Assembly (NCBI RefSeq): GCF_006345805.1
Contig: NC_043023.1
Coordinates: 10,726,001-10,790,000, forward strand
Length of the DNA: 64,000 nucleotides
Source of the DNA: Octopus sinensis
Lineage: Eukaryota
Reading direction: 5' to 3'
Shown one piece after another: positions 5,722 to 62,940 of the stretch. Position numbers and translations under genes: made by a program. The notes beneath the pieces are model-generated. The model saw nothing but the letters and a program-made list of their open reading frames with translations, was not told the DNA's origin and made no database searches. Numbering within the stretch: position 1 is the stretch's first letter; each line of letters begins with the position of its first letter.

Positions 5722-5950
5722 GTGCGTTGTGTGTGTTTGTATGTATGTGTTGTCCCCTAGCATTGCTTGACAACCGATGCTGATGTGTTTATGTCCCGTT
5801 ACTTAGCGGTTCGGCAAAAGAGACCGATAGAATAAGTACTGGGCTTACAAAAGAATAAGTCCCGGGTTCGAGTTGCTCGATTAAAGGCGCGTGTGCTCCA
5901 GCATGGCCGCAGTCAATGACTGAAACAAGTAAAAGAGTAAAGAGTAAAAG
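5496..5950 (+). mobile_element. tRNA-derived SINE family A
   Basis: Complete head, body, (TA)n and tail; several 1-bp indels relative to other copies. Confidence 0.9.
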
Positions 5951-6086: not shown

Positions 6087-6125
<39 letters not shown>

Positions 6126-6127
<2 letters not shown>

Positions 6128-9100
6128 CTAAGCAATAAGGGTTCAGCAACGAATTGCCTTACCACATACCGAATTTAGAAATAGCAGTCAAAGGGTATAG
6201 CTATTTCTTCTACTAAAGGGAGATCTCAGTAAAAACAGCAATTGGAAGGCTGACACAAACAGGTAAGAGAGAATGAATTAACCGCAATCTATCAAACATT
6301 TTTAAAAGTTATCCACGGACGTACGTTTCGAAATCAAGTTTTAGGAAGCATAAGAATTAAAATATTAAATATTAAATAATTCTATCTTACCGAAACTTCT
6401 TTTCTCTTCAGCGTGGAATACTATAATCATAAATGATTATATAGTGAATTTTGAGATACTAGGAGGTACCAACTCAACTCAGTATCAGAGCGAGCTAGAA
6501 TCCTCAACTAGTATCACCGAATTCAAATTTGTGAATGAAACGATTGTGTCAACAGCCCCTTCCACCCGCGTGTAGCCAAAACAAGATGCTGTGGTCATCT
6601 ACTGAGATAAATATGGTTATCCGTAATAATGAAGGGTGAAATTAATTAATTTGGAATAATTATCAATTACACCAAGTAGTCTCGGCATGTAAAAGCCTCA
6701 TATGAGGAAAATTTAAGTAATACTAAGCAATAAGGGTTCAGCAACGAATTGCCTTACCACATACCGATTTAGAAATAGCAGTCAAAGGGTTATAGCTATT
6801 TCTTCTACTAAAAAGGGAGATCTCAGTAAAAAACAGCAATTGGAAGGCTGACACAAACAGGTAAGAGAGAATGAATTAACCGCAATCTATCAAACATTTT
6901 TAAAAGTTATCCACGGACGTACGTTTCGAAATCAAGTTTTAGAAAGCATAAGAATTAAAATATTAAATATTAAATAATTCTATCTTACCGAAACTTCTTT
7001 CTCTTCAGCGTGGAATACTATATAATCATAAATGATTATATATTGAATTTTGAGAATACTAGGAGGTACCAACTCAACTCAGTATCAGAGCGAGCTAGAA
7101 TCCTCAACTAGTATCACCGAATTCAATTTGTGAATGAAACGATTGTGTCAACAGCCCCTTCCCACCGCGTGTAGCCAAAACAAGATGCTGTGGTCATCTA
7201 CTGAGATAAAATATGGTTATCCGTAATAATGAAGGGTGAAATTAATTAATTTGGAATAATTATCAATTACACCAAGTAGTAGTCTTCGGCATGTAAAAGC
7301 CTCATTTGAGGAAAATTTAAGTAATACTAAGCAATAAGGGTTCAGCAACGAATGCCTTACCACATACCGAATTTAGAAATAGCAGTCAAAGGGTTATAGC
7401 TATTTTTCTACTAAAAAGGGAGATCTCAGTAAAACACAGCAATTGGAAGGCTGACACAAACAGGTAAGAGAGAATGAATTAACCGCAATCTATCAAACAT
7501 TTTAAAAGTTATCCACGGACGTACGTTTTCGAAATCAAGTTTTAGGAAAGCAAAGAATTAAAATATTAAATATTAAATAATTCTATCTTACCGAAACTTC
7601 TTTTCTCTTCAGCGTGGAATACTATAATCATAAATGATTATATATGAATTTTGAGATACTAGGAGGGTACCAACTCAACTCAGTATCAGAGCGAGCTAGA
7701 ATCCTCAACTAGTATCACCGAATTCAAATTTGTGAATGAAACGATTGTGTCAACAGCCCCTTCCCACCCGCGTGTAGCCAAAACAAGATGCTGTGGTCAT
7801 CTACTGAGATAAATATGGTTATCCGTAATAATGAAGGGTGAAATTAATTAATTGGAATAATTATCAATTACACCAAGTAGTCTTCGGCATGTAAAAGCCT
7901 CATTTGAGGAAAATTTAAGTAATACTAAGCAATAAGGGTTCAGCAACGAATTGCCTTACCACATACCGAATTTAGAAATAGCAGTCAAAGGGTTATAGCT
8001 ATTTCTTCTACTAAAAAGGGAGATCTCAGTAAAAACAGCAATTGGAGGCTGACACAAACAGGTAAGAGAGAATGAATTAACCGCAATCTATCAAACATTT
8101 TTAAAAGTTATCCACGGACGTACGTTTCGAAATCAAGTTTTAGGAAAGCATAAGAATTAAAAATATTAAATATTAAATATTCTATCTTACCGAAACTTCT
8201 TTTCTCTTCAGCGTGGAATACTATAATCATAAATGATTATATATTGAATTTTGAGATACTAGGAGGTACCAACTCAACTCAGTATCAGAGCGAGCTAGAA
8301 TCCTCAACTAGTATCACCGAATTCAAATTTGTGAATGAAACGATTGTGTCAACAGCCCTTCCCACCCGCGTGTAGCCAAACAAGATGCTGTGGTCATCTA
8401 CTGAGATAAAATATGGTTATCCGTAATAATGAAGGGTGAAATTAATTAATTTGGAATAATTATCAATTACACCAAGTAGTCTTCGGCATGTAAAAGCCTC
8501 ATTTGAGGAAAATTTAAGTAATACTAAGCAATAAGGGTTCAGCAACGAATTGCCTTACCACATACCGAATTTAGAAATAGCAGTCAAGGGTTATAGCTAT
8601 TTCTTCTACTAAAAAGGGAATCTCAGTAACAACAGCAATTGGAAGGCTGACACAAACAGGTAAGAGAGAATGAATATTAACCGCAATCTATCAAACATTT
8701 TAAAAGTTATCCACGGACGTACGTTTCGAAATCAAGTTTTAGGAAAGCATAAGAATTAAAATATTAAATATTAAATAATTCTATCTTACCGAAACTTCTT
8801 TTCTCTTCCTCTTCAGGGGAATACTATAATCATAAATGATTATATATTGAATTTTGAGATACTAGGAGGTACCAACTCAACTCAGTATCAGAGCGAGCTA
8901 GAATCCTCAACTAGTATCACCGAATTCAATTTGTGAATGAAACGATTGTGTCAACAGCCCCTTCCACCCGCGTGTAGCAAAACAAGATGCTGTGGTCATC
9001 TACTGAGATAAATATGGTTATCCGTAATAATGAGGGTGAAATTAATTAATTGGAATAATTATCAATTACCACCAAGTAGTCTTCGGCATGTAAAAGCCTC

Positions 9101-10639
9101 ATTGAGGAAAATTTAAGTAATACTAAGCAATAGGGTTCAGCAACGAATTGCCTTACCACATACCGAATTTAGAATAGCAGCAGTCAAAGGGTTATAGCTA
9201 TTTCTTCTACTAAAAAGGGAGATCTCAGTAAAAACAGCAATTGGAAGGCTGACACAAACAGGTAAGAGAGAATGAATTAACCGCAATCTATCAAACATTT
9301 TTAAAAGTTATCCCGGACGTACGTTTCGAAATCAAGTTTAGGAAAGCATAAGAATTAAAATATTAAATATTAAATAATTCTATCTTACCGAAACTTTTTT
9401 CTCTTCAGCGTGGATACTATAATCATAAATGATTATATATTGAATTTTGAGATACTAGGAGGTACCAACTCAACTCAGTATCAGAGCGAGCTAGAATCCT
9501 CAACTAGTATCCCGAATTCAAATTTGTGATGAAACGATTGTGTCAACAGCCCTCCCACCCGCGTGTAGCCAAAACAAGATGCTGTGGTCATCTACTGAGA
9601 TAAAATATGGTTATCCGTAATAATGAAGGGTGAAATTATTAATTTGAATAATTATCAATTACACAAGTAGTCTTCGGCATGTAAAAGCCTCATTTGAGGA
9701 AAATTTAAGTATACTAAGCAATAAGGGTTCAGCAACGATTGCCTTACCACAGACCGAATTTAGAAATAGCAGTCAAGGGGGTTATAGCTATTTCTTCTAC
9801 TAAAAAGGGAGATCTCAGTAAAAACAGCAATTGGAAGGTGACACAAACAGTAAGAGAGAATGAATTAACCGCAATCTATCAAACATTTTTAAAAGTTATC
9901 ACGGACGTACGTTTCGAATCAAGTTTTAGGAAAGCATAAGAATTAAAATATTAAATATTAAATAATTCTATCTTACCGAAACTTCTTTTCTCTTCAGCGT
10001 GGATACTATAATCATAAATGATATATTGAATTTGAGATACTAGGAGGTACCAACTCCACTCAGTATCAGAGCGAGCTAGAATCCTCAACTAGTATCACCG
10101 AATTCAAATTTGTGAATGAAACGATTGTGTCAACAGCCCTTCACACCGCGTGTAGCCAAAACAAGATGCTGTGGTCATCTACTGAGATAAATATGGTTAT
10201 CCGTAATAATGAAGGGGTGAAATTAATAATTTGAATAATTTACAATTACACCAAGTAGTCTTCGGCATGTAAAAGCCTCATTTGGAAAATTTAAGTAATA
10301 CTAAGCAATAAGGGTTTCAGCAACGAATTGCCTTACCACATACCGAATTTAGAAATAGCAGTCAAAGGGTTATAGCTATTTCTTCTACTAAAAAGGAGAT
10401 CTCAGTAAAAACAGCAATTGAAGGCTGACACAAACAGGTAGAGAGAATGAATTAACCGCAATCTATCAAACATTTTTAAAAGTTATCCACGGACGTACGT
10501 TTCGAAATCAAGTTTTAGGAAAGCATAAGAATTAAATATTAAATATTAAATAATTCTATCTTACCGAAACTTTTTCTCTTCAGCGTGGAATACTATAATC
10601 ATAAATGATTATATATTGAATTTTGAGATACTAGGAGGT
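6126..10639 (-). repeat. ~600-bp tandem array (7 full + 1 partial unit), Penelope-pLTR/retrozyme-like
   Basis: Unit starts (tactaagcaata) at 6126, 6721, 7325, 7923, 8522, 9121, 9712, 10299; units differ almost only by small indels; array begins directly after (TA)n. Confidence 0.95.
6312..6417 (-). ncRNA. Type I hammerhead ribozyme, unit 1 (further copies at 6910-7014, 7512-7618, 8111-8217, 8710-8821, 9311-9414, 9899-10003, 10486-10589)
   Basis: Minus strand: UCCACG-CUGAAGA-G[~75-nt stem II]C-GAAAC-GUAC-GUC|CGUGGA. All core nucleotides present, G10.1-C11.1 pair, stem I closes exactly, palindromic GUAC stem III loop. Predicted cleavage between 6318 and 6317. Stem I is damaged in units 5-7. 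Confidence 0.85.
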
Positions 10640-10877
10640 ACCTCCTAGTATCTCAAAATCAATATATAATCATTATGATTATAGTATTCCAGCTGAAGAG
10701 AAAGAAGTTTCGGTAAGATAGAATTATTTAATATTTAATATTTTAATTCTTATGCTTTCCTAAAACTTGATTTCGAAACGTACGTCCGTGGATAATTTAA
10801 AAATGTTTGATAGATTGCGGTTAATTCATTCTCTCTTACCTGTTTTGTGTCAGCCTTCCAATTGCTGTTTTTACTGA
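10402..10877. repeat. Zero-spacer fold-back palindrome (238-bp arms) ending the array
   Basis: gagatactaggaggtacctcctagtatctc is centred between 10639 and 10640; the right arm is the reverse complement of 10402-10639 apart from small indels. Confidence 0.9.
10688..10792 (+). ncRNA. Plus-strand hammerhead copy in the inverted arm
   Basis: CTGAAGA at 10693-10699 and GAAAC-GTAC-GTC at 10775-10786 followed by cgtgga; the 5' stem I arm lacks one C. Confidence 0.7.
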
Positions 10878-11399
10878 TTGTTGTATGGGTATCTGTATAT
10901 TCTCTTGATTGGCTAAATGAACTATACTAGTTAGTGTAAATGAGCATGCGCAGAACAGTGCGCGAAGAGTGCCATATGCACAGTCATACAGTGTAGAGGT
11001 CGTATGAATAACTGAATAGAGATATCGTGGAGTCCTTGTTGAAGTTACACAGTTGGAGAGTATAAGAGCTCATCCGGAACGCTTAATTTATAACAGTGAC
11101 GACGAGAAGTCGTACGTCATATATCAGATATGTATATATATGTATATATATATATATAGTATATCTATATATATATATATATATATTATATGGCGGTGCC
11201 CCAGCATGGCCACAGCTCAATGAGCTGAAACTAAAATCAATCAATCAATCAATCAATATATATAATATATATATATATACAGTAAAGAAAATAAGGTGGC
11301 TAGCAGCAGGCTGTTTCGCCTCATATATATATATATATATAATATATTATATATATATACATATATATAATATACATATATATATATATACATATATAT

Positions 11400-13740: not shown

Positions 13741-14099
13741 TTTTTTTTAAGTATTTTGTATCTTAATGTGGTGTATAGATAGATAAATTATATCCCATAC
13801 TCTGTAATGGACTCTTCATTATAAAATATGTCTTAATAATACCTGATAATCATTTATAAGATTTATTAATCTCATCTTCTGATGTGTTGAGCAAATTTCT
13901 TTTATAGGTGAGTCTTCCTTAAACTAACGTCAAGAATAATCAAATATGTGTGTCTTTTGAAACTATTGAAACATAGTGATGATCACAGAATTGGAAATGA
14001 TATATAAATTCATAAAGAATGTAGTTACTTATAACTATTTCCATCAGCTTTGAGGTGTTGGAATTTGTTGTTGTGTAGTTCTAGGCAAGACCTGATCAA

Positions 14100-14740
14100 G
14101 AACACGATAATGAAGAGATTGAAGTGGTTGATGATTTCATTTTCCTTGGCTCCAAAATAAATCGAGATGGTGACTCCACTCCAGAAATAAAACGGCGGAT
14201 AGTACTAGGCAGAGAGGCAATGGTCAGCATGAGCAGGGTCTGGAAGTGTAGAGACATCAGACTCGCTACCAGATGCAGATTGGTGAATGCAATTGTCTTC
14301 CCAATAGCAACATATGGATGCGAGACCTGGACACTAAAGAAAGCTGACCAGAAGAGAATTAATGCATTCGAGCTTTGGTGTTGGAGAAGACTTTTACGGA
14401 TTCCATGGACAGCGAGGCTCACCAATGGAGAAGTTCTTAAGCAGATCAGGCCGAAAATGTCGCTAGAAGCTAGGATCACCAAGGCGTAGATTGGCATATT
14501 TCGGTCACATAATCGGAGAAAATCCCTGGAGAAGGACATCATGCTCGGAATGGTCAGTGGCAGAGCAAGAGAGGAAGAGGCCGACCAAGAACCCGCTGGC
14601 TTGACACCATCAAGAGTGATACCAGAATGGACATAGCCAATCTGAAAGAAGCGGCCCAGGATAGAACTGACTGGAGGACACTGATCCAACGAGTGGCCGA
14701 GAGCCGACTTTGACTGAGCGGATAGAGAGAGAGAGAGTGA
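14100..14740 (+). mobile_element. RTE (BovB-like) LINE 3' fragment, RT C-terminus
   Basis: VDDFIFLGSKI...EIKRRI...IATYGCETWTL...RINAFELWCWRRLLRIPWTAR and RTRWLDTIK...AAQDRTDW; stop and frameshift present. Confidence 0.9.
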
Positions 14741-18529: not shown

Positions 18530-18606
18530 TGTTATATATATATATATATTGTTATATATTGTTATATATATATAACAATGAACTTATATATATATATATA
18601 TATATA

Positions 18607-18954
18607 AATGAGGGTCTTTGCAACGTTGCTAGACCACATAGCGAAAGTATTAGAAATAGCAGCCAGAGGACTGTTATTTCGTTTTATTTCATTATTTTTC
18701 CTCGTTTGTTTTTTTTTTGCCATATAATGAGTTACAAATACTGTTGTCTGTGGCGACATATTTTTGTAGTAAAAGAAATAACAGTCCTCTGGCTGCTATT
18801 TCTAATACTTTCGGTATGTGGTCTAGCAACCTGATGCAAAGACACTCATTGTTATAATTATATAAACTTTTACCGAATATGGTCCTTTTCCATACCGAAA
18901 TACTACTTGGTGAAATTTGTTGATTTTATTAAATTAATTATATCTCACCCTTTA

Positions 18955-18955
<1 letters not shown>
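18607..18955. mobile_element. (TA)n-embedded fold-back insertion related to the 600-bp unit
   Basis: Inverted arms 18607-18680 and 18775-18850; shares ccacatac..gaa...tagaaatagcag and tacttggtgaaatt...caccc motifs with the satellite unit. Confidence 0.75.
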
Positions 18956-18998
<43 letters not shown>

Positions 18999-19134
18999 GA
19001 TATGAGTGTTTGCATCTACATATATTTGTAGATATATATGCATATATATGTAGGTGCCCCTTTTTAAGCGTAATTACAATATAAGCCTCACCTTTTTACC
19101 ATTTCTCCCGCACCATCATTACTCCTGTTCACTT

Positions 19135-19535
19135 TTTCTCTTTTACTCTTTTACTTGTTTCAGTCGTTTGACAGCGGCCATGCTGGAGCACCGCCTTTAA
19201 TCGAGCAACTCGACCCCGGGACTTATTCTTTGTAAGCCCAGTACTTATTCTATCGGTCTCTTTTGCCGAACCGCTAAGTAACGGGGACATAAACACACCA
19301 GCATCGGTTGTCAAGCAATGCTAGGGGGACAAACACAGACACACAAACACACACACACATATATATATATACATATATACGAAGGGCTTCTTTCAGTTTC
19401 CGTCTACCAAATCCACTCACAAGGCTTTGGTCGGGTCAAGGCTATAGTAGAAGACACTTGCCCAAGGTGCCACGCAGTGGGACTGAACCCGGAACCATGT
19501 GGTTGGTAAACAAGCTACTTACCACACAGCCACAC
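19135..19535 (-). mobile_element. SINE family A
   Basis: Reverse complement of family A. Confidence 0.9.
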
Positions 19536-23529: not shown

Positions 23530-24510
23530 TCAAATCGAATCAAGTCAAACCAAATCAAAATAGATGAACATCAATGGAATTTGTATCCCTGTGGTACCAG
23601 TGCCGGTGGCACATAAGAAAACCATCCGAACGGGACCGTAGCCAGTACTGCATCGACTGGCCTCCGTGCCGTGGGCACGTAACAAACACCATCCGATCGT
23701 AGCCGTTCGCCAGCCTCGTCTGGCACTTGTGTCGGTGGCACATAAGAAAAACACCGAAAACACCATATCCAAGCGTGGCCGTCAGCCAGCCTCGTCTGGC
23801 ACCTGTGTTGGTGACACATAAGAAAACACCATCCGAGCGTGGCCGTCAGCCAGCCTCGTCTGGCACCTGTGTTGGTGACACATAAGAAAACACCATCCGA
23901 GCGTGGCCGTCAGCCAGCCTCGTCTGGCACCTGTGTTGGTGACACATAAGAAAACACCATCCGAGCGTGGCCGTCAGCCAGCCTCGTCTGGCACCTGTGT
24001 TGGTGACACATAAGAAAACACCATCCGAGCGTGGCCGTCAGCCAGCCTCGTCTGGCACCTGTGTTGGTGACACATAAGAAAACACCATCCGAGCGTGGCC
24101 GTCAGCCAGCCTCGTCTGGCACCTGTGTCGATGGCACATAAAAAACACCATCCGAGCGTGGCCGTCAGCCAGCCTCGTCTGGCACCTGTGTCGGTGACAC
24201 ATAAGAAAACACCATCCGAGCGTGGCCGTCAGCCAGCCTCGTCTGGCACCTGTGTCGGTGGCACATAAAAAACACCATCCGAGCGTGGCCATCTGCCAGC
24301 CTCATCTGGCACCTGTGTCGGTGGCACATAAAATCACCCACTACACTCTCGGAGTGGTTGGCATTAGGAAGGGCATCCAGCTGTAGAAACACTGCCAGAT
24401 CTGACTGGCCTGGTGTAGCCTTCGGGCTTGCCAGACCCCAGTTGAACCGTCCAACCCATGCTAGCATGGAAAGCGGACGTTAAACGATGATGATGATGAT
24501 GATGATGAGA
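23530..24510 (+). mobile_element. Retroelement 3' end with (GAT)n tail containing a 64-bp tandem array (~10 copies, ~23690-24335)
   Basis: agaaaacaccatccgagcgtggccgtcagccagcctcgtctggcacctgtg at 64-bp spacing (23821, 23885, 23949, 24013...); ends gcggacgttaaacgatgatgatg. Confidence 0.8.
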
Positions 24511-24667: not shown

Positions 24668-24857
24668 TTAGGTGCAGGAGTGGCTGTGTGGTAAGTAGCT
24701 TGCTAACCAACCACATGGCTCCGGGTTCAGTCCCACTGCGTGGCATCTTGGGCAAGTGTCTTCTGCTATAGCTTCGGGCCGACCAAAGCCTTGTGAGTGG
24801 ATTTGGTAGACGGAAACTGAAAGAAGTGTGTCGTATGTATAAATGTGTGTGTGTGTG

Positions 24858-24895
<38 letters not shown>

Positions 24896-25069
24896 TAAAA
24901 TATAGGCGTAGGAGTGGCTGTGTGGTAAGTAGCTTGCTAACCAACCACACGGCTCCGGGTTCAGTCCCACTACATGGCACCTTGGGCAAGTGTCTTCTAC
25001 TATAGCCCCGGGCATACCAAAGCATTGTGAGTGGATTTGGTAGACGGAAACTGAAAGAAGCCTGTCGTA

Positions 25070-25146
<77 letters not shown>

Positions 25147-25352
25147 TTGTGTGTGTGTCCCCTAGCATTGCTTGACAACCGATGCTGGTGTGTTTACGTC
25201 CCCGTCACTTAGCGGTTCGGCAAAAGAGACCGATAGAATAAGTACTGGGCTTACAAAAGAATAAGTCCCGGGGTCGATTTTCTCGACTAAAGGCGGTGCT
25301 CCGGCATGGCCGCAGTCAAATGACTGAAATAAGTAAAAGAGTAAAAGAGTTC
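24668..25352 (+). mobile_element. SINE family A with duplicated head
   Basis: Two head/body copies (~24670 and ~24905) followed by one tail. Confidence 0.85.
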
Positions 25353-26760: not shown

Positions 26761-27256
26761 AATTCAGGAATCTGGGGCACACAGACTCAAGATTCAGTAA
26801 ATTTTGGGCAATCCTTTTAGACAAATATTTCACAAGAATATCATTTCTCTGCTGCGTGAATGTATCTATGAGAGGTCAAACTGCCTTGAGAAAAAAATGA
26901 TTTACAGATATATCACAGGGATATGGATTGTCTCTTGTATGAGTGGCTTCATGCTGAGATAATTTCCTTTTACGAGAGAATGCCATACCACAGATATTAC
27001 ATTGATATTGCTTCTCTCTTGTATGAATGGATTTGTGTCTAGTAAGGTTAGATTTTTTAGAGAATGACTTACCACAAATACCACACTGATATGGCTTCTC
27101 ATTAATATGTGTAAATTCATGAGAAGTTAAATATCTTTTTATTACAAAGGATTTACCACAGATATTACATTGATATGGTTGCTCTCCTGTGTGAATGGAT
27201 TTATGAGAAATTAAGGTGCTAATCTGAGAGAATGATTTACCACAAATACCACACTG

Positions 27257-28812
27257 TTATGGCTTCTCATTAATATGTGTAAGTTCATGAGTAGTTAAAT
27301 AACTTCTTATTACAAAAGATTTACCACAAATATCACAATGATATGGTTTCTCTCCTGTATGAATGGATTTGTGTCTAGTAAGGTTAGATTTTTTAGAGAA
27401 TGATTTACCACAAATATCACACTGATATGGCCTCTCATTAGTATGGGTAACTTCATGAGAAGTTAAGTCACTTCTTCCTACAAAGGATTTATCACAGATA
27501 TTACAGTGATATGGCTTATCTCCTGTATGAATTGATTTGTGATAAGTAAGAATACTCTTACGAGAGAATGATTTACCACAAATATCACAAGAATATGGTT
27601 TCTCTCCTGTATGAGTGTATTTGTGAGTGGTAAGGTTACCTTTTAGAGAGAATGATTTACCACATATATCGCACTGATATGGCCTCTTGTTAGTATGTGT
27701 AAGTTTATGAGCAGTTAAATTACTTCTTACTACGAAGGATTTATCACAGATATCACATTGATATGGTTTCTCTCCTGTATGAATGGATTGTGTCTAGTAA
27801 GGTTAGATTTTTTAGAGAATGATTTACCACAAATATCACACTGATATGGCCTCTCATTAGTATGGGTAACTTCATGAGAAGTTAAGTCACTTCTTCCTAC
27901 AAAGGATTTATCACAGATATTACAGTGATATGGTTTCTCTCCTGTATGAGTGTATTTATGGTCAGTAAGGCTACTCCTATGAGAGAATGATTTACCACAA
28001 ATATCACAAGAATATGGTTTCTCTCCTGTATGAGTGTATTTGTGAGTGGTAAGGTTACCTTTTAGAGAGAATGATTTACCACATATATCGCACTGATATG
28101 GCCTCTCATTAGTATGTGTAAGTTTATGAGCAGTTAAATTACTTCTTACTACGAAGGATTTATCACAGATATCACACTGATATGGTTTCTCTCCTGTATG
28201 AATGGATTTGTGATGAGTAAGGTGACTTTTTTGAGAGAATGATTTACCACAAATATCACAAGAATATGGTTTATCTCCTGTATGAATGGATTTGTGATAA
28301 GTAAGGCCACGCCTCTGAGAGAATGATTTACCACAAATATCACACTGATATGGCCTCTCATTAGTATGTGTAAGTTTATGAGAAGTTAAGTCACTTCTTC
28401 CTACAAAGGATTTATCACAGATATTACAGTGATATGGTTTATCTCCTGTATGAATTGATTTGTGATAAGTAAGGCTATTCTTATGAGAGAATGATTTACC
28501 ACAAATATCACAAGAATATGGTTTCTCTCCAGTATGAATGTATTTGTGATAACTTAAGCCACTCCTATGAGAGAATGATTTACCACAGATATCACAATGA
28601 TATGGTTTCTCTCCTGTATGAGTGTATTTGTGAGAAGTAAGACTACTTTTCTGCATAAAAGACTTTCCACATATCTCACAGCGATGTTTCTTTCCTCCTG
28701 CATGGATACGTTTGTGAGCAGCGAGATTTCCCTTACTAGATAAAGACTTTTTACAGATATCACATTGGTGTGATAATTTTTCTCTTTCTTTTGGCATCTC
28801 TTCAGGATTCAT
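27257..28812 (-). CDS. C2H2 zinc-finger protein ZNF-1 (18 fingers, 518 aa if the 1-bp deletion at 27788 is corrected)
   Basis: ATG at 28812; CxxC-12-HxxxH repeats with TGEKP/TGDKP/TNERP linkers; a missing T at 27788-27789 (compare 27361 copy) shifts the frame; TAA at 27259-27257; four more intact fingers follow to ~26930. Confidence 0.85.
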
Positions 28813-29192
28813 TATTGTTCTCCAGTACACAAGCACAAAATGTATTTTTTTGTTTCTTCTTTATATATTTCTCGGTTGATTCAAAAAGTTCTACAGCTAT
28901 AATTACAGCTGATCTGATCTTTGTGAATATCTGAAGCTAATACAAACACATTTGCAGATTTTTCCAAGTTCAAGCAGAAGGTCCGATACTTTTGTAAATA
29001 TTCCTGGCAATGGAATAAAGCAAATGTTGCTATTAATTCAGAAGAAATATTTTCAGTTATTTACCAGAGATTTGTTATAGAAACAGGGTGATATATATTA
29101 TTTATAATATCTTCCATTAGTCTTCAAGTGATGATCAATATTCATGATGGATCTGATGTAAAAACTCCTTTATACCACAAACATTTCATATT
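28813..29192 (-). other. Non-coding leader of ZNF-1 exon 2
   Basis: Acceptor tcatttcag|aatatg (AG at 29194-29193); homologous to the leaders at 43972 and 56188. Confidence 0.6.
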
Positions 29193-31314: not shown

Positions 31315-31316
31315 TA

Positions 31317-31585
31317 GCAACGATTTGCCTCACCACACACCGAATTTAGAAATAGCAGTCAAAAGAGTTTTGCTGTGGTTTTACTGGGATCTCCCTTTTA
31401 AGTAGAAAGAATAGCCAAAACTCTTTTGACTGCTATTTCTAAATTCGGTGTGTGGTGAGGCAAATCGTTGCTAAACCCTTAATTACTTAGTATTACTTAA
31501 ACCTTCCTTGAATGGGGCTTTTACATGCCGAAATCTACTTGGTGAAATTAATGATTATTTCAAATTAATTAATTTCACCCTATAT

Positions 31586-31587
<2 letters not shown>
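31317..31587. mobile_element. (TA)n-embedded fold-back insertion closely related to the 600-bp unit
   Basis: Perfect 56-bp inverted arms 31317-31372 and 31416-31471 with a 43-nt spacer; the minus copy continues to aatttcaccc|(TA)n. Confidence 0.85.
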
Positions 31588-31633
<46 letters not shown>

Positions 31634-32489: not shown

Positions 32490-35400
32490 TCAAACTCCAC
32501 CCGTCTAACACCCGCGGACAGGTTTACAAAGTCAGAAAACAGCACAGCTCCCATGACTTTCGGAAACATTTTTTTCACGCTGAGAGTTGCTGAAGCAAGG
32601 AACAAACTGCAGGCATCAGTTGTTAGTTGTCGGAGCACTGCATCCTTCAAAACTTCCATGCTTCCTGAGATTCGCCAACACTACACCTGATCTTTCTCCC
32701 CTCCATACACACAAGCAAGCATGTATCTGACTCATACATTGTTCGCTTCCCAGACATTTGTACATTACTGTATATGCTTTATACGCACTTTTGACAAATT
32801 GTGGTGCATCTGAGCACTGTATACAATAATTTCATTATTATTATTATTTGAAAACTCCACCTGTTTAACACTCGTGGACATATTTACAAAGTCAGAAAAC
32901 AGCACAGCTCCTTCCATGACTTCAGGAAACATTTTTTCACGCTGAGAATTGCTGAAGCATGGAACAAACTGCCAGTATCAGTTGTTAGTTGTCGGAGCAC
33001 TGCATCCTTCAAAACTTCCATGCTTCCTGAGATTCGCCAACACTACACCTGATCTTTCTCCCCTCCATACACACAAGCAAGCATGTATCTGACTCATACA
33101 TTGTTCGCTTCCCAGACATTTGTACATTACTGTATATGCTTTATACGCACTTTTGACAAATTGTGGTGCATCTGAGCACTGTATACAATAATTTCATTAT
33201 TATTATTATTTGAAAACTCCACCTGTTTAACACTCGTGGACATATTTACAAAGTCAGAAAACAGCACAGCTCCTTCCATGACTTCAGGAAACATTTTTTC
33301 ACGCTGAGAATTGCTGAAGCATGGAACAAACTGCCAGCATCAGTTGTTAGTTGTCGGAGCACTGCATCCTTCAAAACTTCCATGCTTCCTGAGATTCGCC
33401 AACACTACACCTGATCTTTCTCCCCTCCATACACACAAGCAAGCATGTATCTAACTCATACATTGTTCGCTTCCCAGACATTTGTACATTACTGTATATG
33501 CTTTATACGCACTTTTGACAAATTGTGGTGCATCTGAGCACTGTATACAATAATTTCATTATTATTATTATTTGAAAACTCCACCTGTTTAACACTCGTG
33601 GACATATTTACAAAGTCAGAAAACAGCACAGCTCCCATGACTTCAGGAAACATTTTTTCACGCTGAGAATTGCTGAAGCATGGAACAAACTGCCAGCATC
33701 AGTTGTTAGTTGTCGGAGCACTGCATCCTTCAAAACTTCCATGCTTCCTGAGATTCGCCAACACTACACCTGATCTTTCTCCCCTCCATACACACACAAG
33801 CATGTATCTAACTCATACATTGTTCGCTTCCCAGACATTTGTACATTACTGTATATGCTTTATACGCACTTTTGACAAATTGTGGTGCATCTGAGCACTG
33901 TATACAATAATTTCATTATTATTATTATTTGAAAACTCCACCTGTTTAACACTCGTGGACATATTTACAAAGTCAGAAAACATCACAGCTCCTTCCATGA
34001 CTTTCGGAAACATTTTTTCACGCTGAGAATTGCTGAAGCATGGAACAAACTGCCAGCATCAGTTGTTAGTTATCGGAGCACTGCATCCTTCAAAACTTCC
34101 ATGCTTCCTGAGATTCGCCAACACTACACCTGATCTTTCTCCCCTCCATACACACACAAGCATGTATCCAACTCATACATTGTTCGCTTCCCAGACATTT
34201 GTACATTACTGTATATGCTTTATACGCACTTTTGACAAATTGTGGTGCATCTGAGCACTGTATACAATAATTTCATTATTATTATTATTTGAAAACTCCA
34301 CCTGTTTAACACTCGTGGACATATTTACAAAGTCAGAAGACAGCACAGCTCCCATGACTTTCGGAAATATTTTTTTCACGCTGAGAGTTGCTGAAGCATG
34401 GAACAAACTGCCAGCATCAGTTGTTAGTTGTCGGAGCACTGCATCCTTCAAAACTTCCATGCTCCCTGAGATTCGTCAACACTACACCTGATCTTTCTCC
34501 CCTCCATACACACACAAGCATGTATCTGACTCATACATTGTTCGCTTCCCAGACATTTGTACATTACTGTATATGCTTTATACACACTTTTGACAAATTG
34601 TGGTGCATCTGAGCACTGTATACAATAATTTCATTATTATTATTATTTGAAAACTCCACCTGTTTAACACTCGTGGACATATTTACAAAGTCAGAAAACA
34701 GCACAGCTCCTTCCATGACTTTCGGAAACATTTTTTCACGCTGAGAATTGCTGAAGCATGGAACAAACTGCCAGCATCAGTTGTTAGTTATCGGAGCACT
34801 GCATCCTTCAAAACTTCCATGCTTCCTGAGATTCGCCAACACTACACCTGATCTTTCTCCCCTCCATACACACACAAGCATGTATCGAACTCATACATTG
34901 TTCGCTTCCCAGACATTTGTATATTACTGTATATGCTTTATACGCACTTTTGACAAATTGTGGTGCATCTGAGCACTGTATACAATAATTTCATTATTAT
35001 TATTATTTGAAAACTCCACCTGTTTAACACTCGTGGACATATTTACAAAGTCAGAAAACAGCGCAGCTCCCATGACTTTCGGAAACATTTTTTTCACGCT
35101 GAGAGTTGCTGAAGCATGGAACAAACTGCCGGCATCAGTTGTTAGTTGTCGGAGCACTGCATCCTTCAAAACTTCCATGCTTCCTGAGATTCGCCAACAC
35201 TACACCTGATCTGTCTCCCCTCCATACACACACAAGCATGTATCTGACTCATACATTGTTCGCTTTCCAGACATTGGTACATTACTGTATATGCTTTATA
35301 CGCACTTTTGACAAATTGTGGTGCATCTGAGCACTGTATACAATAATTTCATTATTATTATTATTTGAAAACTCCACCTGTTTAACACTCGTGGTCATAT

Positions 35401-35990
35401 TTACAAAGTCAGAAAACAGCACAGCTCCTTCCATGACTTTCGGAAACATTTTTTTCACGCTGAGAATTGCTGAAGCATGGAACAAACTGCCGGCATCAGT
35501 TGTTAGTTGTCGGAGCAGTGCACCCTTCAAAACTTCCATGCTTCCTGAGATTCGCCAACACTACACCTGATCTTTCTCCCCTCCATACACACAAGCAAGC
35601 ATCTATCTGACTCATACATTGTTCGCTTTCCAGACATTTGTACATTACTGTATATGCTTTATATGCACTTTTGACAAATTGTGGTGCATCTGAGCACTGT
35701 ATACAATAATTTCATTATTATTATTATTTGAAAACTCCACCCGTCTAACACTCGTGGACATATTTACAAAGTCAGAAAACAGCACAGCTCCCATGACTTC
35801 AGGAAACATTTTTTCACGCTAAGAGTTGCTGAAGCATGGAACAAACTGCCAGCATCAGTTGTTAGTTGTCGGAGCACTGCATCCTTCAAAACTTCCATGC
35901 TTCCTGAGATTCGCCAACACTACACCTGATCTTTCTCCCCTCCATACACACAAGCAAGCATGTATCTGACTCATACACTGTTCGCTTCCC
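32490..35990 (+). repeat. ~359-bp satellite (10 units) derived from a CR1-type LINE 3' end
   Basis: Unit encodes TRGHIYKVRKQHSSHDFRKHFFTLRIAEAWNKLPASVVSCRSTASFK (CR1/L2 ORF2 C-terminal motif) plus 3' UTR and (ATT)n tail; spacings 362, 362, 357, 360, 358, 360, 358, 363. Confidence 0.9.
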
Positions 35991-41551: not shown

Positions 41552-42445
41552 TCACATATAAAACAGAAGTGACCACATACAAACGATGTGCTGGACTCAC
41601 AGAATATCGGCAAAATTCCTCAGTTATGATGTTTTCTTGTTTATAAAATCTCTTATTATAAAAGGCAGATTTTATCTGCCTTCCTTTGTCTCTTATAGAA
41701 ATCTACAATATAGGATTTCTTCAATTACAATTTACCTAGCATTTTTAAGAGTAGAATGCATCGGGTTTTGCCAGGTCCGGTTTTTAAAATTTCAACCCCA
41801 ATTAAGCAAAATTTAGAGAAAACTCACATTGTGGTGTATATGTCAAATGCTTTTCCTAGTTTGGGTTACAGCACATGCAAACGCACACACACAGTGTGCA
41901 ACGAATAAAGTGAAAGTAATTCACTGTGTGTTGACAGGTAGACAATAGAATGCGATGGCGATGGCGATGTAATATTTGTTTCTGTCTATGACGCTGATAG
42001 ATACATGAGTAAAATGTATGGGAAGCTAAGAGATAAGAGTGAGTGAAAATGTTCTTGGAAGAGAGTAAATAGCGAGAGAGTGATTTGATGAAGACTTTAC
42101 ATTAAATAACCGTAGTGGCATTGTCACATGAAGAGGAGTGAGAGGGTACTGGAGGAAATAGAGTGAGTGAGGAAAATGGCCCCTAGCAACCACACCTTTT
42201 AAGATAGGGATTTCTAAGGTAGCCCACGAGCATCGTCACCTCATTCTACATGTCCCTGTAAATTTTGGAGCGAATCGGACAGGATAAAGTTATCTCTAAG
42301 AAACAGAAAGATCGCCCAAAAGTGTATATAGATATTTAAATGTATTTATATATTCATCTATACACACATGTATGTATAATGTGCGTGTATATATTTCCAT
42401 AGAGGTAACCATTCAATCCATACAAAGTTTTTTAGGACGAAAATA

Positions 42446-43290: not shown

Positions 43291-44034
43291 TATAATATAA
43301 AACGGTCATTCAGTCAATTTAATTAGTTTGCTTTGTAATCGCACTGACACAACCGAGAAGAGTAAGTCAAGAAATGTTGTCTGATGTTTACGTAAAACGA
43401 CCTCAGATACAAAACAGAAACATGCTGGGTGATCCTTCGGTATATGTCCCGTAAGTAGCGGAAGTAGCTTTGTTTACATTTCTGAAGATAACAGAAACCC
43501 TTTTCTCCTAACCCTAACCCCCCATATATATATATAAAAAAAAAACAACACTTTCTTGAAATGTATCCGGTACTTCCGTGTCGTATACCGAAGATACACC
43601 ACATGCTGGACTTCGTATTCCCAAGATCCTTCAAACATTCCTCATGTACATCGCACCTATTACTCCCTTTCATCATCAGAGATGCCCATATTGTCAGCCA
43701 CTAACAATATTTCTGCTTCAGCAGCTCAGCAATGAATCTGGGGTCAAGGGTCAAGATAGAGGGGGCGAGGCTTCTATGATAAAATGTGTTGGATGGAGGG
43801 TAGGAGAGAAACTATGATGACTAAAAATTGTGAAGGGTACAGGGGTGAATGCAGTGCATGGAATGAAAGTAAGGAAGAAGAGCAGAAAAGATGATGACTA
43901 GATGTTTTACAGCTACTTTCCATACATCCCTCATGTCTTACAATGTTTTGTTTTTTCTTCTCTAATTTCAGGTTATTGGTAACATTGGCACCGAAGAATG
44001 TTTTTTACATCACCAATATTTAATCATCTTTTAA

Positions 44035-44253: not shown

Positions 44254-44278
44254 TTAAAGACTAAAAGAATATATACAC

Positions 44279-44841: not shown

Positions 44842-44986
44842 ATATACACAGAACATATATAACACTGTTTTGAGATTATTAGCAACGTTTCTCTACTTCA
44901 CTGCTTGGAAAGATCACAAGATGATTTTTTTGCCTTCGCATTAAATTTGCATTATAAAGGAGTTTGCCAAATGTTCAGATAGAATA

Positions 44987-61735: not shown

Positions 61736-62581
61736 TTTGATATAATTGTTTCTTTAATTCTCTCAGCTGGGGTCAAAGTTGTTATAAATCCCATTTTAAC
61801 TCCGGTTAATCCATGCCGAAGTTTTGAAGATAGTTATATAAATAGAGATAACAAACATACGGAAGCATCCCGTAAGCCTTTATTACAGTAAATAAAGCAA
61901 ATAGGATTGTCCTGCAAACGAGGAAAGTGGATTGCTATGGGCTTTAAAGGCCTAATAGTGATGGTGAGTGGATATTAGTATCTACCAATCGACCTCTGGT
62001 TTTGCTGGATCTCTATTTTATTGATTCTGAAGCAGTGAAAGGTAAAATTGAGATCGGCGGAATTTGAGCTCAGAACATAAAAGACCAGAAGAAATACTGC
62101 ATGGCCTAAATAATTGCTATTAATTTTAGTACGATGCTATAATTTCGTTTCGGTACTTAAAGCAAACCAATGCATGTTTTATACATTCCCCATTACAGGT
62201 TATCGACAAGGGAACCTGTTTTCATGGATGTTTGTGGGGACAGATATTCTCTTGTTTGAAATTATTGACTTTTCTTGGTGAATTTCTACTTGTGTATCAA
62301 AACTGATGAAGAAAGGACTATATGGAAGATAACGAGTGAGAGTAAATCGTGAGTGAAGTAATAATTCCATCTTATTTTTATATTTAAGTTCGTTTTCTCT
62401 TTGTAGAAACCTGTTATAATCGGAGATCTTAAGATATTCAAGATTTGTTTTCATTTTACCGATCATAAATACTATTCTAAACCTGCTGAAATTATGAAAT
62501 TAATTGATCACATCTTCAAACAATAACTCTCCCTTTTGTTGCAGTAAGTAACAATATCGTTAAAGCTATATATAGAGAGAG

Positions 62582-62940
62582 ATAATAACAAAGGGTAAAA
62601 TTAATTAATTAAGAAGTAATCAGTAATTTCACCAAGTAGAATTCGGCATGAAAAAGACCATTTCATGGTAAGCTTAAGTAATATTTTATAATTAGGGTTC
62701 AGCAAAGATTTGCTTTACCACATACCGGAGTTTAGAAATAGCAGTCAAAAAAACCTTAGCTATTTCTTCTACTTTAAAAAGGGACTCCCAGAAAACCCAA
62801 ATACTTGAAAACAATCTACGCAGGCAGAGAGGAAAAATAACGAAAATCAATCTATATCTGGTTACCCATGTACGCGCCTTTTCGGAATTAGATCGGTATA
62901 AAGAATATAGAATTATACTTTACCCAACCATACAGAGAGT
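62582..62940. mobile_element. Diverged dispersed relative of the 600-bp hammerhead unit
   Basis: aagggtaaaattaattaatt...caccaagtagaattcggcatg...agggttcagcaa...ccacatacc...tagaaatagcagtcaaa...gctatttcttctact are colinear with the unit; follows a (TA)/(GA) run. Confidence 0.8.

What the first reader, a model, noticed from the sequence alone, without database searches (positions are those of the whole stretch)
6126..10877. Tandem array of ~600-bp units each carrying a hammerhead ribozyme core: candidate octopus retrozyme / Penelope-like circRNA locus
Seen: 7.6 head-to-tail units. On the minus strand each reads CUGAAGA-stem II-GAAAC-GUAC-GUC, framed by UCCACG/CGUGGA where intact. Predicted cleavage sites (6318, 6916, 7518, 8117, 8716, 9316, 9904, 10492) are 588-602 nt apart. 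I found no long ORF in the unit. Established: type I hammerheads with a 2-bp stem III and palindromic tetraloop are typical of Penelope-like element pLTRs and animal non-LTR retrozymes. They work best as dimers in tandem transcripts and yield monomeric linear and circular RNAs, usually a few hundred nt. Inference: minus-strand transcription would be cut into ~600-nt monomers that could circularise and be reinserted by a Penelope-type RT, giving a long and possibly undescribed cephalopod retrozyme.
Basis: partly seen in the sequence, partly recalled or inferred. Interest (0 to 1): 0.92.

Follow-up and report, generated by a model that had tools for sequence, protein, structure and literature searches.

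The report
Octopus hammerhead-ribozyme tandem repeat (retrozyme)
A young, non-coding tandem array of about 600-bp units in an octopus chromosome carries a canonical self-cleaving hammerhead ribozyme motif in each unit, so it is a new cephalopod example of the known animal "retrozyme" repeats rather than a new kind of element.

Summary
No reading frame exceeds 68 aa, and chance expectation for the motif is 0.

Corrections:
- The last 238 nt (10640-10877) is an inverted partial unit with a ninth hammerhead on the plus strand.
- Only 4 of 9 ribozymes are lesion-free as assembled. The lesions are mostly 1-nt homopolymer indels, typical of long-read assembly noise.
- Rfam's type I model aligns end to end but scores 21-24 bits against a threshold of 34, because helix II holds 71-75 nt.

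The locus meets the sequence definition of a non-LTR retrozyme. It is tandem and non-coding, with 34 % GC, a type I hammerhead per unit and a strongly structured RNA (z about -6 to -7). Helix III is palindromic and predicted to form the double hammerhead.

New evidence suggests Penelope-like insertion. The array and two of three dispersed partial copies sit in (TA)n tracts and carry inverted 5' arms with copy-specific junctions. No Penelope RT is in the window.

Transcription, cleavage, circular RNA and other genomic copies could not be tested. Verdict: a new member of a known kind, of moderate interest.

The parts
6125..10639 (-). Direct tandem array of 7.5 units. The consensus unit is 599 nt, 34 % GC and non-coding. 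The 3' end of the array lies at unit position ~198.
10640..10877 (+). Inverted partial unit (unit positions 449 to 92) forming a zero-spacer palindrome with 10403-10639. The symmetry axis lies within GGTACC at 10639/10640.
6312..6417 (-). Hammerhead copy, cleavage after C at 6318. Core, 6-bp stem I, 75-nt helix II and 2-bp helix III with GUAC loop are all intact.
6910..7014 (-). Hammerhead copy, cleavage site 6916. Intact.
7512..7618 (-). Hammerhead copy, cleavage site 7518. It reads GAAAA instead of GAAA, a 1-nt homopolymer insertion in the core.
8111..8217 (-). Hammerhead copy, cleavage site 8117. Intact.
8710..8822 (-). Hammerhead copy, cleavage site 8716. The 5' strand of stem I and the CUGAAGAG region are rearranged (CCCCUGAAGAGGAAGAG). 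Defective as assembled.
9310..9415 (-). Hammerhead copy, cleavage site 9316. The core is intact, but the 3' strand of stem I lacks 1 nt (CGGGA). This is the best Rfam hit, at 24.1 bits.
9898..10003 (-). Hammerhead copy, cleavage site 9904. The core is intact. There are 1-nt deletions at the base of helix II and in the 3' strand of stem I.
10486..10589 (-). Hammerhead copy, cleavage site 10492. Core and stem I are intact, and helix II is 2 nt shorter.
10687..10793 (+). Ninth hammerhead copy, on the plus strand inside the inverted arm (cleavage after 10786). The 5' strand of stem I lacks 1 nt (UCCAG).
6090..6127 (.). (AT)n tract directly abutting the 3' end of the array. Presumed AT-rich insertion target.
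31316..31607 (+). Dispersed partial copy A. The direct part covers unit positions 77 to ~292 (84-86 % identity). It is preceded by an inverted piece (unit ~106-189) identical to its own direct part. (TA)n lies on both sides.
18592..18979 (+). Dispersed partial copy C. The direct part covers unit positions ~30 to ~292 (67-72 % identity). It is preceded by an inverted piece (unit ~113-205) that is 88 % identical to its own direct part in the local alignment. (TA)n lies on both sides.
62564..62852 (-). Dispersed partial copy B. It covers unit positions ~1/25 to ~292 (73-80 % identity). No inverted piece and no ribozyme half.

Best explanation
This is a genomic copy of a non-LTR retrozyme. That is a non-autonomous, non-coding retroelement made of tandem ~599-nt units, each encoding a canonical type I hammerhead ribozyme on the minus strand.

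Proposed mechanism:
1. Shown: the array exists and each unit carries the complete catalytic core (CUGAAGA ... GAAA ... GUC). Stem I is 6 bp. Proximal helix II is 4 bp and continues past an internal loop into a long imperfect hairpin. Helix III is 2 bp, capped by the palindrome GUAC.
2. Inferred: a multimeric minus-strand transcript is made. It is probably a Pol II product, because each unit holds seven T4+ runs that would stop Pol III.
3. Predicted by folding: two hammerheads pair through the 8-nt palindrome ACGUACGU into a double hammerhead. They cut after GUC and release 599-nt monomers.
4. Inferred from the family: host RNA ligase circularises the monomers into stable, highly base-paired circRNA. 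A single hammerhead with its weak helix III stays mostly uncut in that form.
5. Inferred from insertion footprints in this window: a Penelope-like RT/GIY-YIG protein encoded elsewhere nicks AT-rich (TA)n DNA on both strands and primes reverse transcription at internal RNA sites. On circular or multimeric template it runs round repeatedly and gives a tandem array with an inverted 5' arm. On a cleaved linear monomer it runs off near unit position 1 and gives ribozyme-less solo copies.
For: Ribozyme:
- Motif counts are 7-9 against a chance expectation of 0-0.09.
- Rfam RF00163 aligns over model positions 1-45 of 45 with all core nucleotides matched.
- The unconstrained MFE of the 125-nt domain gives stem I and helix II. 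The hammerhead-constrained fold costs only 1.1 kcal/mol more.
- The cofold of two domains is -57.0 against 2 x -22.3 kcal/mol, with an 8-bp intermolecular helix III and swapped stem I. This is the classical double hammerhead.
- The anatomy matches the 'canonical metazoan type I' description: helix I 6 bp, helix II 4 bp, helix III 1-2 bp with a palindromic loop (PMC4209133).

Retrozyme features:
- 7.5 tandem units, no ORF and 34 % GC.
- The monomer RNA is far more stable than dinucleotide shuffles. The hammerhead strand gives z = -7.4 linear and -6.3 circular, against -4.5 and -3.4 for the antisense. Stem I and helix II are retained in the circular MFE.
- Two consecutive complete hammerheads (6318, 6916) meet the operational 'active' criterion of the 2026 preprint.
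- The unit length lies inside the reported 51-972 bp range.

Youth:
- There are 0-6 substitutions per unit in six of seven units, and 59 of 77 indels are of homopolymer type.

PLE-type insertion:
- The array's 3' end abuts (AT)n.
- The array, copy A and copy C each have an inverted 5' arm derived from their own direct copy, with different junctions.
- Copies A and C lie inside (TA)n.
- (TA)n covers about 3.3 % of the window (summed). Three of four insertions falling in it is therefore unlikely by chance.
- PLEs are described as forming partial tandems with an adjacent inverted 5'-truncated copy (PMC8557442). That paper reports the (TA)n insertion bias for the Naiad PLE clade.
- A purified PLE nicks AT-rich DNA on both strands and initiates reverse transcription internally (PMC11167929).
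- The sister species O. vulgaris has 329 recently active Penelope insertions (PMC13282606).
Against: - There is no evidence here of transcription, cleavage or circular RNA.
- Five of nine ribozymes carry a lesion as assembled.
- All Rfam scores are below the gathering threshold.
- The 75-nt helix II removes the usual terminal loop 2. The loop-loop tertiary contact needed for fast cleavage at physiological Mg would have to be supplied by internal loops, which is unproven.
- No PLE ORF lies in the window, and no target-site duplication is visible.
- 241 nt of unique sequence separates the inverted arm from the next (TA)n.
- The array's 3' end (unit ~198) differs from that of the solo copies (~292).
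- No independent copies could be retrieved, so covariation in the helices is untested.
- The dispersed copies lack the ribozyme half. They may belong to a separate SINE-like family that the unit merely shares a module with.
Confidence: 0.7

Rival explanations
1. Inert satellite or minisatellite. A fossil hammerhead-bearing repeat, originally from a retroelement, was expanded at this locus purely at the DNA level by unequal crossing-over or replication slippage. It has no present RNA life cycle.
For: - Adjacent units u6 and u7 share three variants, and u4, u6 and u7 share two more. This is some neighbour structure, as expected from unequal exchange.
- More than half of the ribozyme copies carry a lesion as assembled.
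- No RT gene is nearby.
- The window holds several other tandem arrays derived from retroelement tails.
- Classical hammerhead satellites (newt, Schistosoma, cave cricket) were long read this way.
Against: - The lesions are mostly 1-nt homopolymer indels of the kind made by long-read assembly, and substitutions are at most 1 %.
- The core is exact in 7 of 9 copies.
- RNA-level structure is strongly non-random and strand-asymmetric.
- The inverted arm and the (TA)n context recur in independent dispersed copies, which DNA-level slippage does not explain.
- All hammerhead satellites that were tested in other animals turned out to be expressed as circRNAs (PMC7229834).
Confidence: 0.2
2. Chimeric unit. 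The array unit is a fusion of an abundant SINE-like short element (unit positions ~1-292, with a defined 3' end and (TA)n targeting) with an unrelated hammerhead-bearing segment. The insertion hallmarks then belong to the SINE-like family's mobiliser and say nothing about how the array arose.
For: - Three dispersed copies in 64 kb all stop at unit position ~292. None has the ribozyme half.
- They are 14-33 % diverged from the array unit, so they are older or belong to another subfamily.
- The array's own 3' end (unit ~198) differs from theirs.
Against: - The array itself shows the same two hallmarks as the solo copies: a (TA)n-abutting 3' end and an inverted 5' arm.
- Solo homology begins close to the ribozyme cleavage site. 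This is what run-off reverse transcription on a cleaved monomer would give.
- Monomeric derivatives of retrozymes are described in vertebrates.
Confidence: 0.2
3. Assembly artefact. The zero-spacer palindrome, and possibly the copy number of the array, was created by a chimeric or foldback long read or by mis-assembly of a repeat.
For: - The assembly shows dense 1-nt homopolymer indels. It also shows frameshifted ZNF arrays.
- The two units next to the palindrome are the most error-laden, at 12-13 deletions each.
- Perfect zero-spacer palindromes are a known long-read artefact (my knowledge).
Against: - Two independent dispersed copies (A, C) have analogous inverted 5' pieces, one of them already diverged from its partner. 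The architecture is therefore biological for this family.
- The eight spaced sites and the unique flanks are not what a collapse or chimera produces.
- The ribozyme motif itself cannot be an artefact.
Confidence: 0.1
4. Part of an autonomous Penelope-like element. The repeats would be tandem pseudo-LTRs (pLTRs) of a PLE whose ORF lies within or next to the array.
For: PLE pLTRs carry hammerheads and occur in partial tandems with inverted copies.
Against: - Units are 599 nt with no frame above 68 aa.
- No RVT or GIY-YIG Pfam match was found in the ten largest non-repetitive stop-free stretches of the flanks or in the window's large ORFs.
- The hammerhead is of the canonical type I kind, not the minimal PLE kind.
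Confidence: 0.03

Closest known systems
Mussel (Mytilus galloprovincialis) non-LTR retrozymes (Cervera & de la Pena 2020, PMC7229834)
   Same: - Both are from molluscs.
- Both are tandem non-coding repeats with one type I hammerhead per unit and low GC.
- In both, the archetypal loop 1-loop 2 nucleotides are not evident.
- Both are predicted to fold into highly self-paired RNA.
   Different: - The mussel units are 350-390 bp and have a short helix II.
- The mussel elements are shown to be expressed as abundant circRNA. Here the unit is 599 nt, helix II is 73-76 nt and expression is unknown.
Newt satellite 2 and axolotl retrozymes (Rtz_331, Rtz_353)
   Same: - Both have a type I hammerhead with a 1-2 bp helix III capped by a palindromic tetraloop.
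- In the amphibians the ribozyme cleaves efficiently only as a dimer in tandem transcripts, and the same is predicted here.
- Both are organised as tandem arrays.
   Different: - The amphibian units are 330-350 bp.
- The amphibian motifs have canonical loop 1-loop 2 contacts and copy numbers of 10^4-10^5.
- They are from vertebrates.
Penelope-like element pLTR hammerheads (Cervera & de la Pena 2014; Frangieh et al. 2024)
   Same: - Both hammerheads are expected to work as dimers.
- Both are associated with partial tandems, inverted 5'-truncated copies and AT-rich or (TA)n targets.
- Internal initiation of reverse transcription would explain ends that do not coincide with the cleavage site.
   Different: - PLEs encode RT plus GIY-YIG. 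Their hammerheads are usually 'minimal', with no helix III, a 6-8 bp helix II and a short helix I.
- This locus has no ORF, and its hammerhead has canonical helices I and III.
Plant LTR retrozymes
   Same: - Both are non-autonomous, hammerhead-processed and non-coding.
- Monomer size is comparable (600-1000 nt).
   Different: - The plant elements have type III hammerheads located in LTRs.
- They have PBS and PPT motifs, 4-bp TSDs and Ty3/Gypsy mobilisation.
- They are dimeric rather than multimeric arrays.
Discontinuous Clec2 hammerhead (Martick et al. 2008)
   Same: It is a precedent for a very large insertion in a peripheral helix of a natural hammerhead.
   Different: - The insertion is in helix I, and the motif is type III.
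- It is a single-copy 3'-UTR motif in mammals, not a mobile repeat.

Membership tests
Hammerhead ribozyme, type I (Rfam RF00163) | Conserved catalytic core: C3 U4 G5 A6 N7 G8 A9, G12 A13 A14, the A15.1-U16.1 pair, and cleavage after H17 (here GUC) | tested here: met
   The core is exact in 7 of 9 copies. One copy has an extra A in GAAA, and one has its 5' side rearranged.
Hammerhead ribozyme, type I (Rfam RF00163) | Three helices around the core, with helix I open-ended (type I topology) | tested here: met
   Stem I is UCCACG/CGUGGA (6 bp), helix II is a closed hairpin, and helix III is 2 bp plus GUAC. The Rfam alignment covers model positions 1-45 of 45.
Hammerhead ribozyme, type I (Rfam RF00163) | Score at or above Rfam's curated gathering threshold (34 bits) | tested here: not met
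   Scores are 20.8-24.1 bits, and there are no gathering-level hits. The deficit is explained by a 71-nt insertion where the model has 10 positions. No core mismatch is involved.
Hammerhead ribozyme, type I (Rfam RF00163) | Site-specific self-cleavage in Mg2+ | not testable with these tools
   This needs in vitro transcription of monomer and dimer constructs.
Hammerhead ribozyme, type I (Rfam RF00163) | Helices supported by compensatory changes among homologues | tested here: inconclusive
   The only copies available are the near-identical ones in this array. No relatives turned up in metagenome or viral collections or through the protein handle.
Non-LTR retrozyme (Cervera & de la Pena 2020; Li et al. 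2026) | Tandem repeats, each unit with a type I hammerhead, and at least two consecutive complete motifs | tested here: met
   There are 7.5 direct units. The complete motifs at 6318 and 6916 are consecutive. The criterion is quoted.
Non-LTR retrozyme (Cervera & de la Pena 2020; Li et al. 2026) | No coding capacity, and no LTR, PBS or PPT | tested here: met
   The longest frame is 68 aa and is not conserved. Units are simple head-to-tail repeats.
Non-LTR retrozyme (Cervera & de la Pena 2020; Li et al. 2026) | Low GC content (below 45-50 %) | tested here: met
   GC is 34 %.
Non-LTR retrozyme (Cervera & de la Pena 2020; Li et al. 2026) | Monomer size within the described range | tested here: met
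   At 599 nt the unit is outside the ~170-400 nt given for invertebrates in 2020. It is inside the 51-972 bp reported in 2026.
Non-LTR retrozyme (Cervera & de la Pena 2020; Li et al. 2026) | Highly self-paired monomer RNA | tested here: met
   Fold energy gives z = -7.4 (linear) and -6.3 (circular) against dinucleotide shuffles, with 63-64 % of bases paired.
Non-LTR retrozyme (Cervera & de la Pena 2020; Li et al. 2026) | Expressed as linear and circular monomeric RNA | not testable with these tools
   No transcriptome data could be reached.
Non-LTR retrozyme (Cervera & de la Pena 2020; Li et al. 2026) | Multiple dispersed genomic loci, showing mobility | tested here: inconclusive
   Within the window only ribozyme-less partial copies exist.
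Penelope-like element (autonomous) | ORF with a telomerase-like RT and a GIY-YIG endonuclease | tested here: not met
   There is no ORF in the unit. No RVT or GIY-YIG Pfam hit was found in the flanking stretches tested or in the window's large ORFs.
Penelope-like element (insertion signature only) | Partial tandem plus an adjacent inverted 5'-truncated copy, with an AT-rich or (TA)n target | tested here: met
   The array has an inverted arm at 10640-10877 and (AT)n at 6090-6127. Copies A and C have their own inverted pieces inside (TA)n. The signature is described.

The most novel reading that the evidence does not exclude
The family preserves genomic footprints of how animal retrozymes are mobilised. 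Ribozyme-less solo copies would be run-off cDNAs of hammerhead-cleaved linear monomers, starting near unit position 1 and ending at a fixed internal reverse-transcription start at ~292. The tandem array would be rolling-circle cDNA of the circular form. In all three cases the inverted arm ends ~92-106 nt 'upstream' of the direct copy's 3' end, which would reflect two-strand priming by a Penelope-type enzyme. The hammerhead would also represent a subclass in which internal loops of extended helices I and II replace terminal loops as tertiary partners. Such a subclass escapes Rfam and standard descriptors, so retrozymes would be under-counted in cephalopods.
Probability: 0.25. Interest if true: 0.6.

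Novelty: new member of a known kind. Interest (0 to 1): 0.4.

Why it matters
Self-cleaving hammerhead repeats (retrozymes) are abundant sources of small circular RNAs in many animals, and how they are mobilised is still only inferred.

I found no report of a hammerhead or retrozyme in cephalopods in the searchable literature. This locus would therefore extend the family to a lineage known for unusual RNA biology and a repeat-rich genome.

Three practical points follow:
1. The ribozyme is missed by Rfam at curated thresholds and by descriptors that limit helix II length. Cephalopod and mollusc surveys may therefore under-count such elements.
2. A 599-nt unit with a clean palindromic helix III is a convenient substrate for testing the dimer-cleavage and monomer-protection logic.
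3. An array and solo copies with inverted arms at (TA)n sites lie in one 64-kb window. This gives a concrete, genome-wide testable prediction about Penelope-type, internally primed, two-strand reverse transcription.

If the element is merely a dead satellite, it remains an ordinary repeat annotation.

Tried and rejected
1. Relatives in public DNA collections. The pattern CTGAAGAG-N55-85-CGAAACGTACGTC gave 6 metagenome hits and 0 viral hits. All six lack a stem I complement and any similarity to the unit, so they are chance matches.
2. A pseudo-ORF as a handle. The 68-aa consensus frame was used to look for other assemblies or transcriptomes carrying the repeat. No candidate was found.
3. A route to a paralogous array. 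The ZNF region has a 98.8 % paralogue about 730 kb away. The ankyrin ORF search meant to supply a nearer handle was swamped by repeat words and returned only 30-33 % hits. The array's paralogue, if any, was not reached.
4. The unit as an old dimer of two ~300-nt subunits. This was suggested by GGATAAC following both unit position 1 and position 292. The halves are no more similar than shuffles (local score 19 against 19.5 +/- 2.1), so the idea is rejected.
5. A diverged second ribozyme upstream of solo copies B and C. Alignment there decays to noise, and Rfam in permissive mode finds no other hammerhead in 11-64 kb.
I scanned stop-free stretches instead and found no RT or EN.
7. An octopus repeat library or species lists in paper supplements. 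Nothing usable is held.
8. Other Rfam hits in the region (mir-2985, MIR1512, mir-297 and similar). These are sub-threshold matches to the palindrome and to microsatellites, not genes.

Full report
**Observation**

- The repeat finder shows eight in-register copies between 6231 and 10576, spaced 587-603 nt apart. TRF missed the array only because its longest period is 500.
- On the minus strand, GAAACGTACGTC occurs at 6318, 6916, 8117, 8716, 9316, 9904 and 10492, and with one mismatch at 7518. Chance expectation is 0.09.
- The full pattern CTGAAGA-(50-80 nt)-GAAACGTACGTC matches seven times against 0.00 expected.
- Cleavage-to-cleavage monomers are 598, 602, 599, 599, 600, 588 and 588 nt long and 93-98 % identical.
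- No ORF exceeds 66 aa in the array or 68 aa in a consensus dimer, and none is conserved between units.

**Corrections to the observation**

1. One of the seven full-pattern matches is on the plus strand (10693-10786). The array ends in a zero-spacer palindrome whose axis lies in GGTACC at 10639/10640.
   - 10640-10877 is an inverted partial unit (unit positions 449 to 92). It mirrors 10403-10639 apart from 1-nt indels.
   - The locus is therefore 7.5 direct units plus a 0.4-unit inverted arm, not 7.6 head-to-tail units.
2. As assembled, only four ribozymes (6318, 6916, 8117, 10492) have a flawless core and stem I. The other five are damaged:
   - 7518 reads GAAAA.
   - 8716 has a rearranged 5' side.
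   - 9316 and 9904 each lack one nucleotide in the 3' strand of stem I.
   - The plus-strand copy lacks one nucleotide in the 5' strand.
3. Differences between units are dominated by single-base indels. There are 77 events, of which 59 are of homopolymer type.
   - Substitutions per unit against the consensus number 2, 3, 0, 3, 5, 6 and 14.
   - The two units next to the palindrome carry 12-13 deletions each.
   - This looks like long-read assembly noise on a very young or homogenised array, so the lesions should not be taken at face value.

**Host**

- An exact look-up of a window ZNF ORF places the window on CM016885.1 of GCA_006345805.1.
- The fetched locus L008 matches window 43269-48117 at 100 %, so the window is CM016885.1:10,726,001-10,790,000.
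- From memory this accession is the Octopus sinensis chromosome-level assembly. The tools confirmed only that this species name is a valid octopod taxon.
- A 98.8 % paralogue of the ZNF region lies about 730 kb away.

**The ribozyme**

- Rfam at gathering thresholds reports nothing in the window.
- In permissive mode Hammerhead_1 (RF00163) hits three copies at 20.8-24.1 bits, against a gathering score of 34.
- A focused scan aligns the 6318 copy to model positions 1-45 of 45: UCCACG CUGAAGAG A[71]U CGAAAC GUAC GUC CGUGGA. Every core position matches, and the only departure is 71 nt where the model has 10.
- Folding gives the following:
  - Stem I is 6 bp, then a 2x2 internal loop, then 3 more pairs.
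  - Helix II starts with 4 bp (G10.1-C11.1 plus three A-U pairs). A 2x2 internal loop follows, then a long imperfect AT-rich hairpin, for 73-76 nt in the undamaged copies.
  - Helix III is 2 bp capped by GUAC.
  - The unconstrained MFE is -22.3 kcal/mol and already contains stems I and II. The hammerhead-constrained fold is -21.2.
- The 6-bp helix I, 4-bp helix II and 1-2-bp helix III with a palindromic loop are exactly the 'canonical metazoan type I' anatomy described by Cervera and de la Pena (PMC4209133). The difference here is that both 'loops' are internal loops of continuing helices.
- Two domains cofold at -57.0 against 2 x -22.3 kcal/mol. They form an 8-bp intermolecular ACGUACGU helix III with swapped stem I strands, which is the classical double hammerhead.
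- A large insertion in a peripheral helix has precedent in the discontinuous Clec2 hammerhead. A 75-nt helix II is nonetheless atypical for retrozyme motifs.

**The monomer**

- The 599-nt consensus is 34 % GC.
- Its RNA is much more stable than dinucleotide shuffles. The hammerhead strand gives z = -7.4 (linear) and -6.3 (circular). The antisense strand gives -4.5 and -3.4.
- Stem I and helix II survive in the whole-circle MFE.
- The sense strand has seven T4+ runs per unit (read from the consensus). Multimeric transcripts would therefore need Pol II rather than Pol III. This is an inference.

**Context**

- The window holds ankyrin and C2H2-ZNF genes, a Pif1/Helitron fragment and LINE-tail fragments.
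- Neither the window's large ORFs nor the ten largest non-repetitive stop-free stretches within about 6 kb of the array match RVT or GIY-YIG families.
- The low flank is a SINE with at least ten copies in the window, followed by (AT)n at 6090-6127, which abuts the array's 3' end (unit position ~198).
- The high flank is 241 nt of sequence unique in the window, followed by (TA)n at 11119.

**Dispersed relatives: a new finding**

- BLAST and nhmmer with the consensus find three partial copies elsewhere in the window:
  - A, 31316-31607, plus strand
  - B, 62564-62852, minus strand
  - C, 18592-18979, plus strand
- All three correspond to the first ~290 nt after the cleavage site and end at unit position ~292. 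None has the ribozyme half.
- A and C lie inside (TA)n tracts on both sides.
- Each begins with a short inverted piece derived from its own direct part. In A the piece is identical over about 70 nt, including A-specific variants. In C it is 88 % identical in the local alignment.
- The junctions differ between A and C, so the inversions arose per insertion.
- The array has the same two hallmarks.
- (TA)n covers about 3.3 % of the window (summed). Three of four insertions falling in it is unlikely by chance.
- In all three cases the inverted arm's outer end lies 92-106 nt upstream, in unit coordinates, of the direct copy's 3' end. With n = 3 this remains unexplained.

**Comparison with the known**

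- Non-LTR retrozymes are tandem, non-coding, low-GC repeats with a type I hammerhead per unit. They are expressed as self-paired circRNAs in corals, mussels (350-390 bp units) and salamanders (PMC7229834).
- A 2026 preprint finds consensus lengths of 51-972 bp. It counts arrays with at least two consecutive complete hammerheads as active, and it derives these elements from PLE pLTRs.
- PLE insertions form partial tandems with an adjacent inverted 5'-truncated copy. A (TA)n target bias is reported for the Naiad clade (PMC8557442).
- A purified PLE nicks AT-rich DNA on both strands and starts reverse transcription at internal RNA sites (PMC11167929).
- O. vulgaris has 30 Penelope families with 329 recently active insertions (PMC13282606).
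- I found no paper reporting a hammerhead or retrozyme in cephalopods.

**Mechanism proposed**

1. A multimeric minus-strand transcript is made.
2. Double-hammerhead cleavage after GUC releases 599-nt monomers.
3. The monomers are ligated into circles.
4. A PLE protein encoded elsewhere reverse-transcribes them at (TA)n sites.
   - Rolling-circle copying gives arrays.
   - Run-off on cleaved linear monomers gives ribozyme-less solo copies.

Shown here are the anatomy, the array, the fold statistics and the insertion footprints. Transcription, cleavage, circularisation and the PLE partner are all inferred.

**Rivals**

- An inert satellite expanded at the DNA level.
- A chimeric unit that merely shares a module with a SINE-like family.
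- An assembly artefact for the palindrome.
- A fragment of an autonomous PLE, which is effectively excluded.

**Dead ends**

- Metagenome and viral pattern scans gave only chance matches.
- A pseudo-ORF handle found nothing.
- An ankyrin handle to reach a possible paralogous array failed.
- The 'old dimer' idea failed a shuffle test.
- No second hammerhead lies upstream of the solo copies or anywhere in 11-64 kb.

**Verdict**

This is a real and well-formed feature. It is best filed as a new, cephalopod member of the known non-LTR retrozyme kind. It has an unusually long helix II and useful insertion footprints. Interest is moderate, and activity is unproven.

Noticed in passing
window 10403-10877: A zero-spacer palindrome of ~237-nt arms closes the array. 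Any transcript through it could fold into a long perfect hairpin (dsRNA). Rfam miRNA models (mir-2985, MIR1512) give sub-threshold hits to it.
   Followed up: partly
window 10878-11118: 241 nt of sequence unique within the window sits between the inverted arm and the next (TA)n tract. It has no Pfam hit in its 77-aa open frame, and its origin is unknown. It could be a co-inserted 'tail' or original target DNA.
   Followed up: partly
window 18592-18979, 31316-31607, 62564-62852: Three dispersed copies are homologous only to unit positions ~1/77-292. Three copies in 64 kb suggests an abundant SINE-like family. In the three insertions with an inverted arm (array, A, C), the arm ends ~92-106 nt upstream, in unit coordinates, of the direct 3' end.
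   Followed up: partly
window 32492-35990: A second large tandem array has a 360-bp period, 9.7 copies and 96 % identity. Its unit encodes a short ...FFTLRIAEAWNKL... frame that from memory resembles a retroelement RT C-terminal tail. No ribozyme hit was found there. It lies ~900 bp from dispersed copy A.
   Followed up: no
window 47043-47716 and 14085-14730: A tandem repeat (174 bp x 3.9) carries an open frame (...RGRGQPRTGWLDTIKSD...DRTDWR...) that from memory resembles a LINE protein tail. A related single fragment lies at 14.1-14.7 kb. This is a further tandem array apparently built from a retroelement 3' end.
   Followed up: no
window 43269-48117 vs L007 (CM016885.1:10,039,366-10,044,214): This is a segmental duplication. 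The ZNF region has a 98.8 % paralogue about 730 kb away encoding an identical 282-aa ZNF ORF. In the paralogue, homology jumps from window 41649 to 43291, so the Pif1/Helitron fragment at 42663-43211 is absent there.
   Followed up: partly
window 26879-28860 (minus strand): A C2H2 zinc-finger array is split over three reading frames (26879-27256, 27260-27793, 27733-28860). It is either a pseudogene or further evidence of 1-nt indel errors in the assembly.
   Followed up: no
window 5730-5950 and at least 10 other sites (e.g. 19132-19353, 25136-25350, 55538-55748): A ~220-nt SINE-type repeat occurs at 80-93 % identity, often followed by microsatellites. Tandem variants with periods of 169-234 nt occur at 24669-25103 and 54791-55529.
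   Followed up: no
window 58917-59030: A near-perfect hairpin is hit by the mir-515 model on both strands (57 and 54 bits against a gathering score of 68). It is probably a palindromic repeat rather than a miRNA gene.
   Followed up: no
window 23756-24331: A 64-bp minisatellite, 9 copies, 97 % identical.
   Followed up: no
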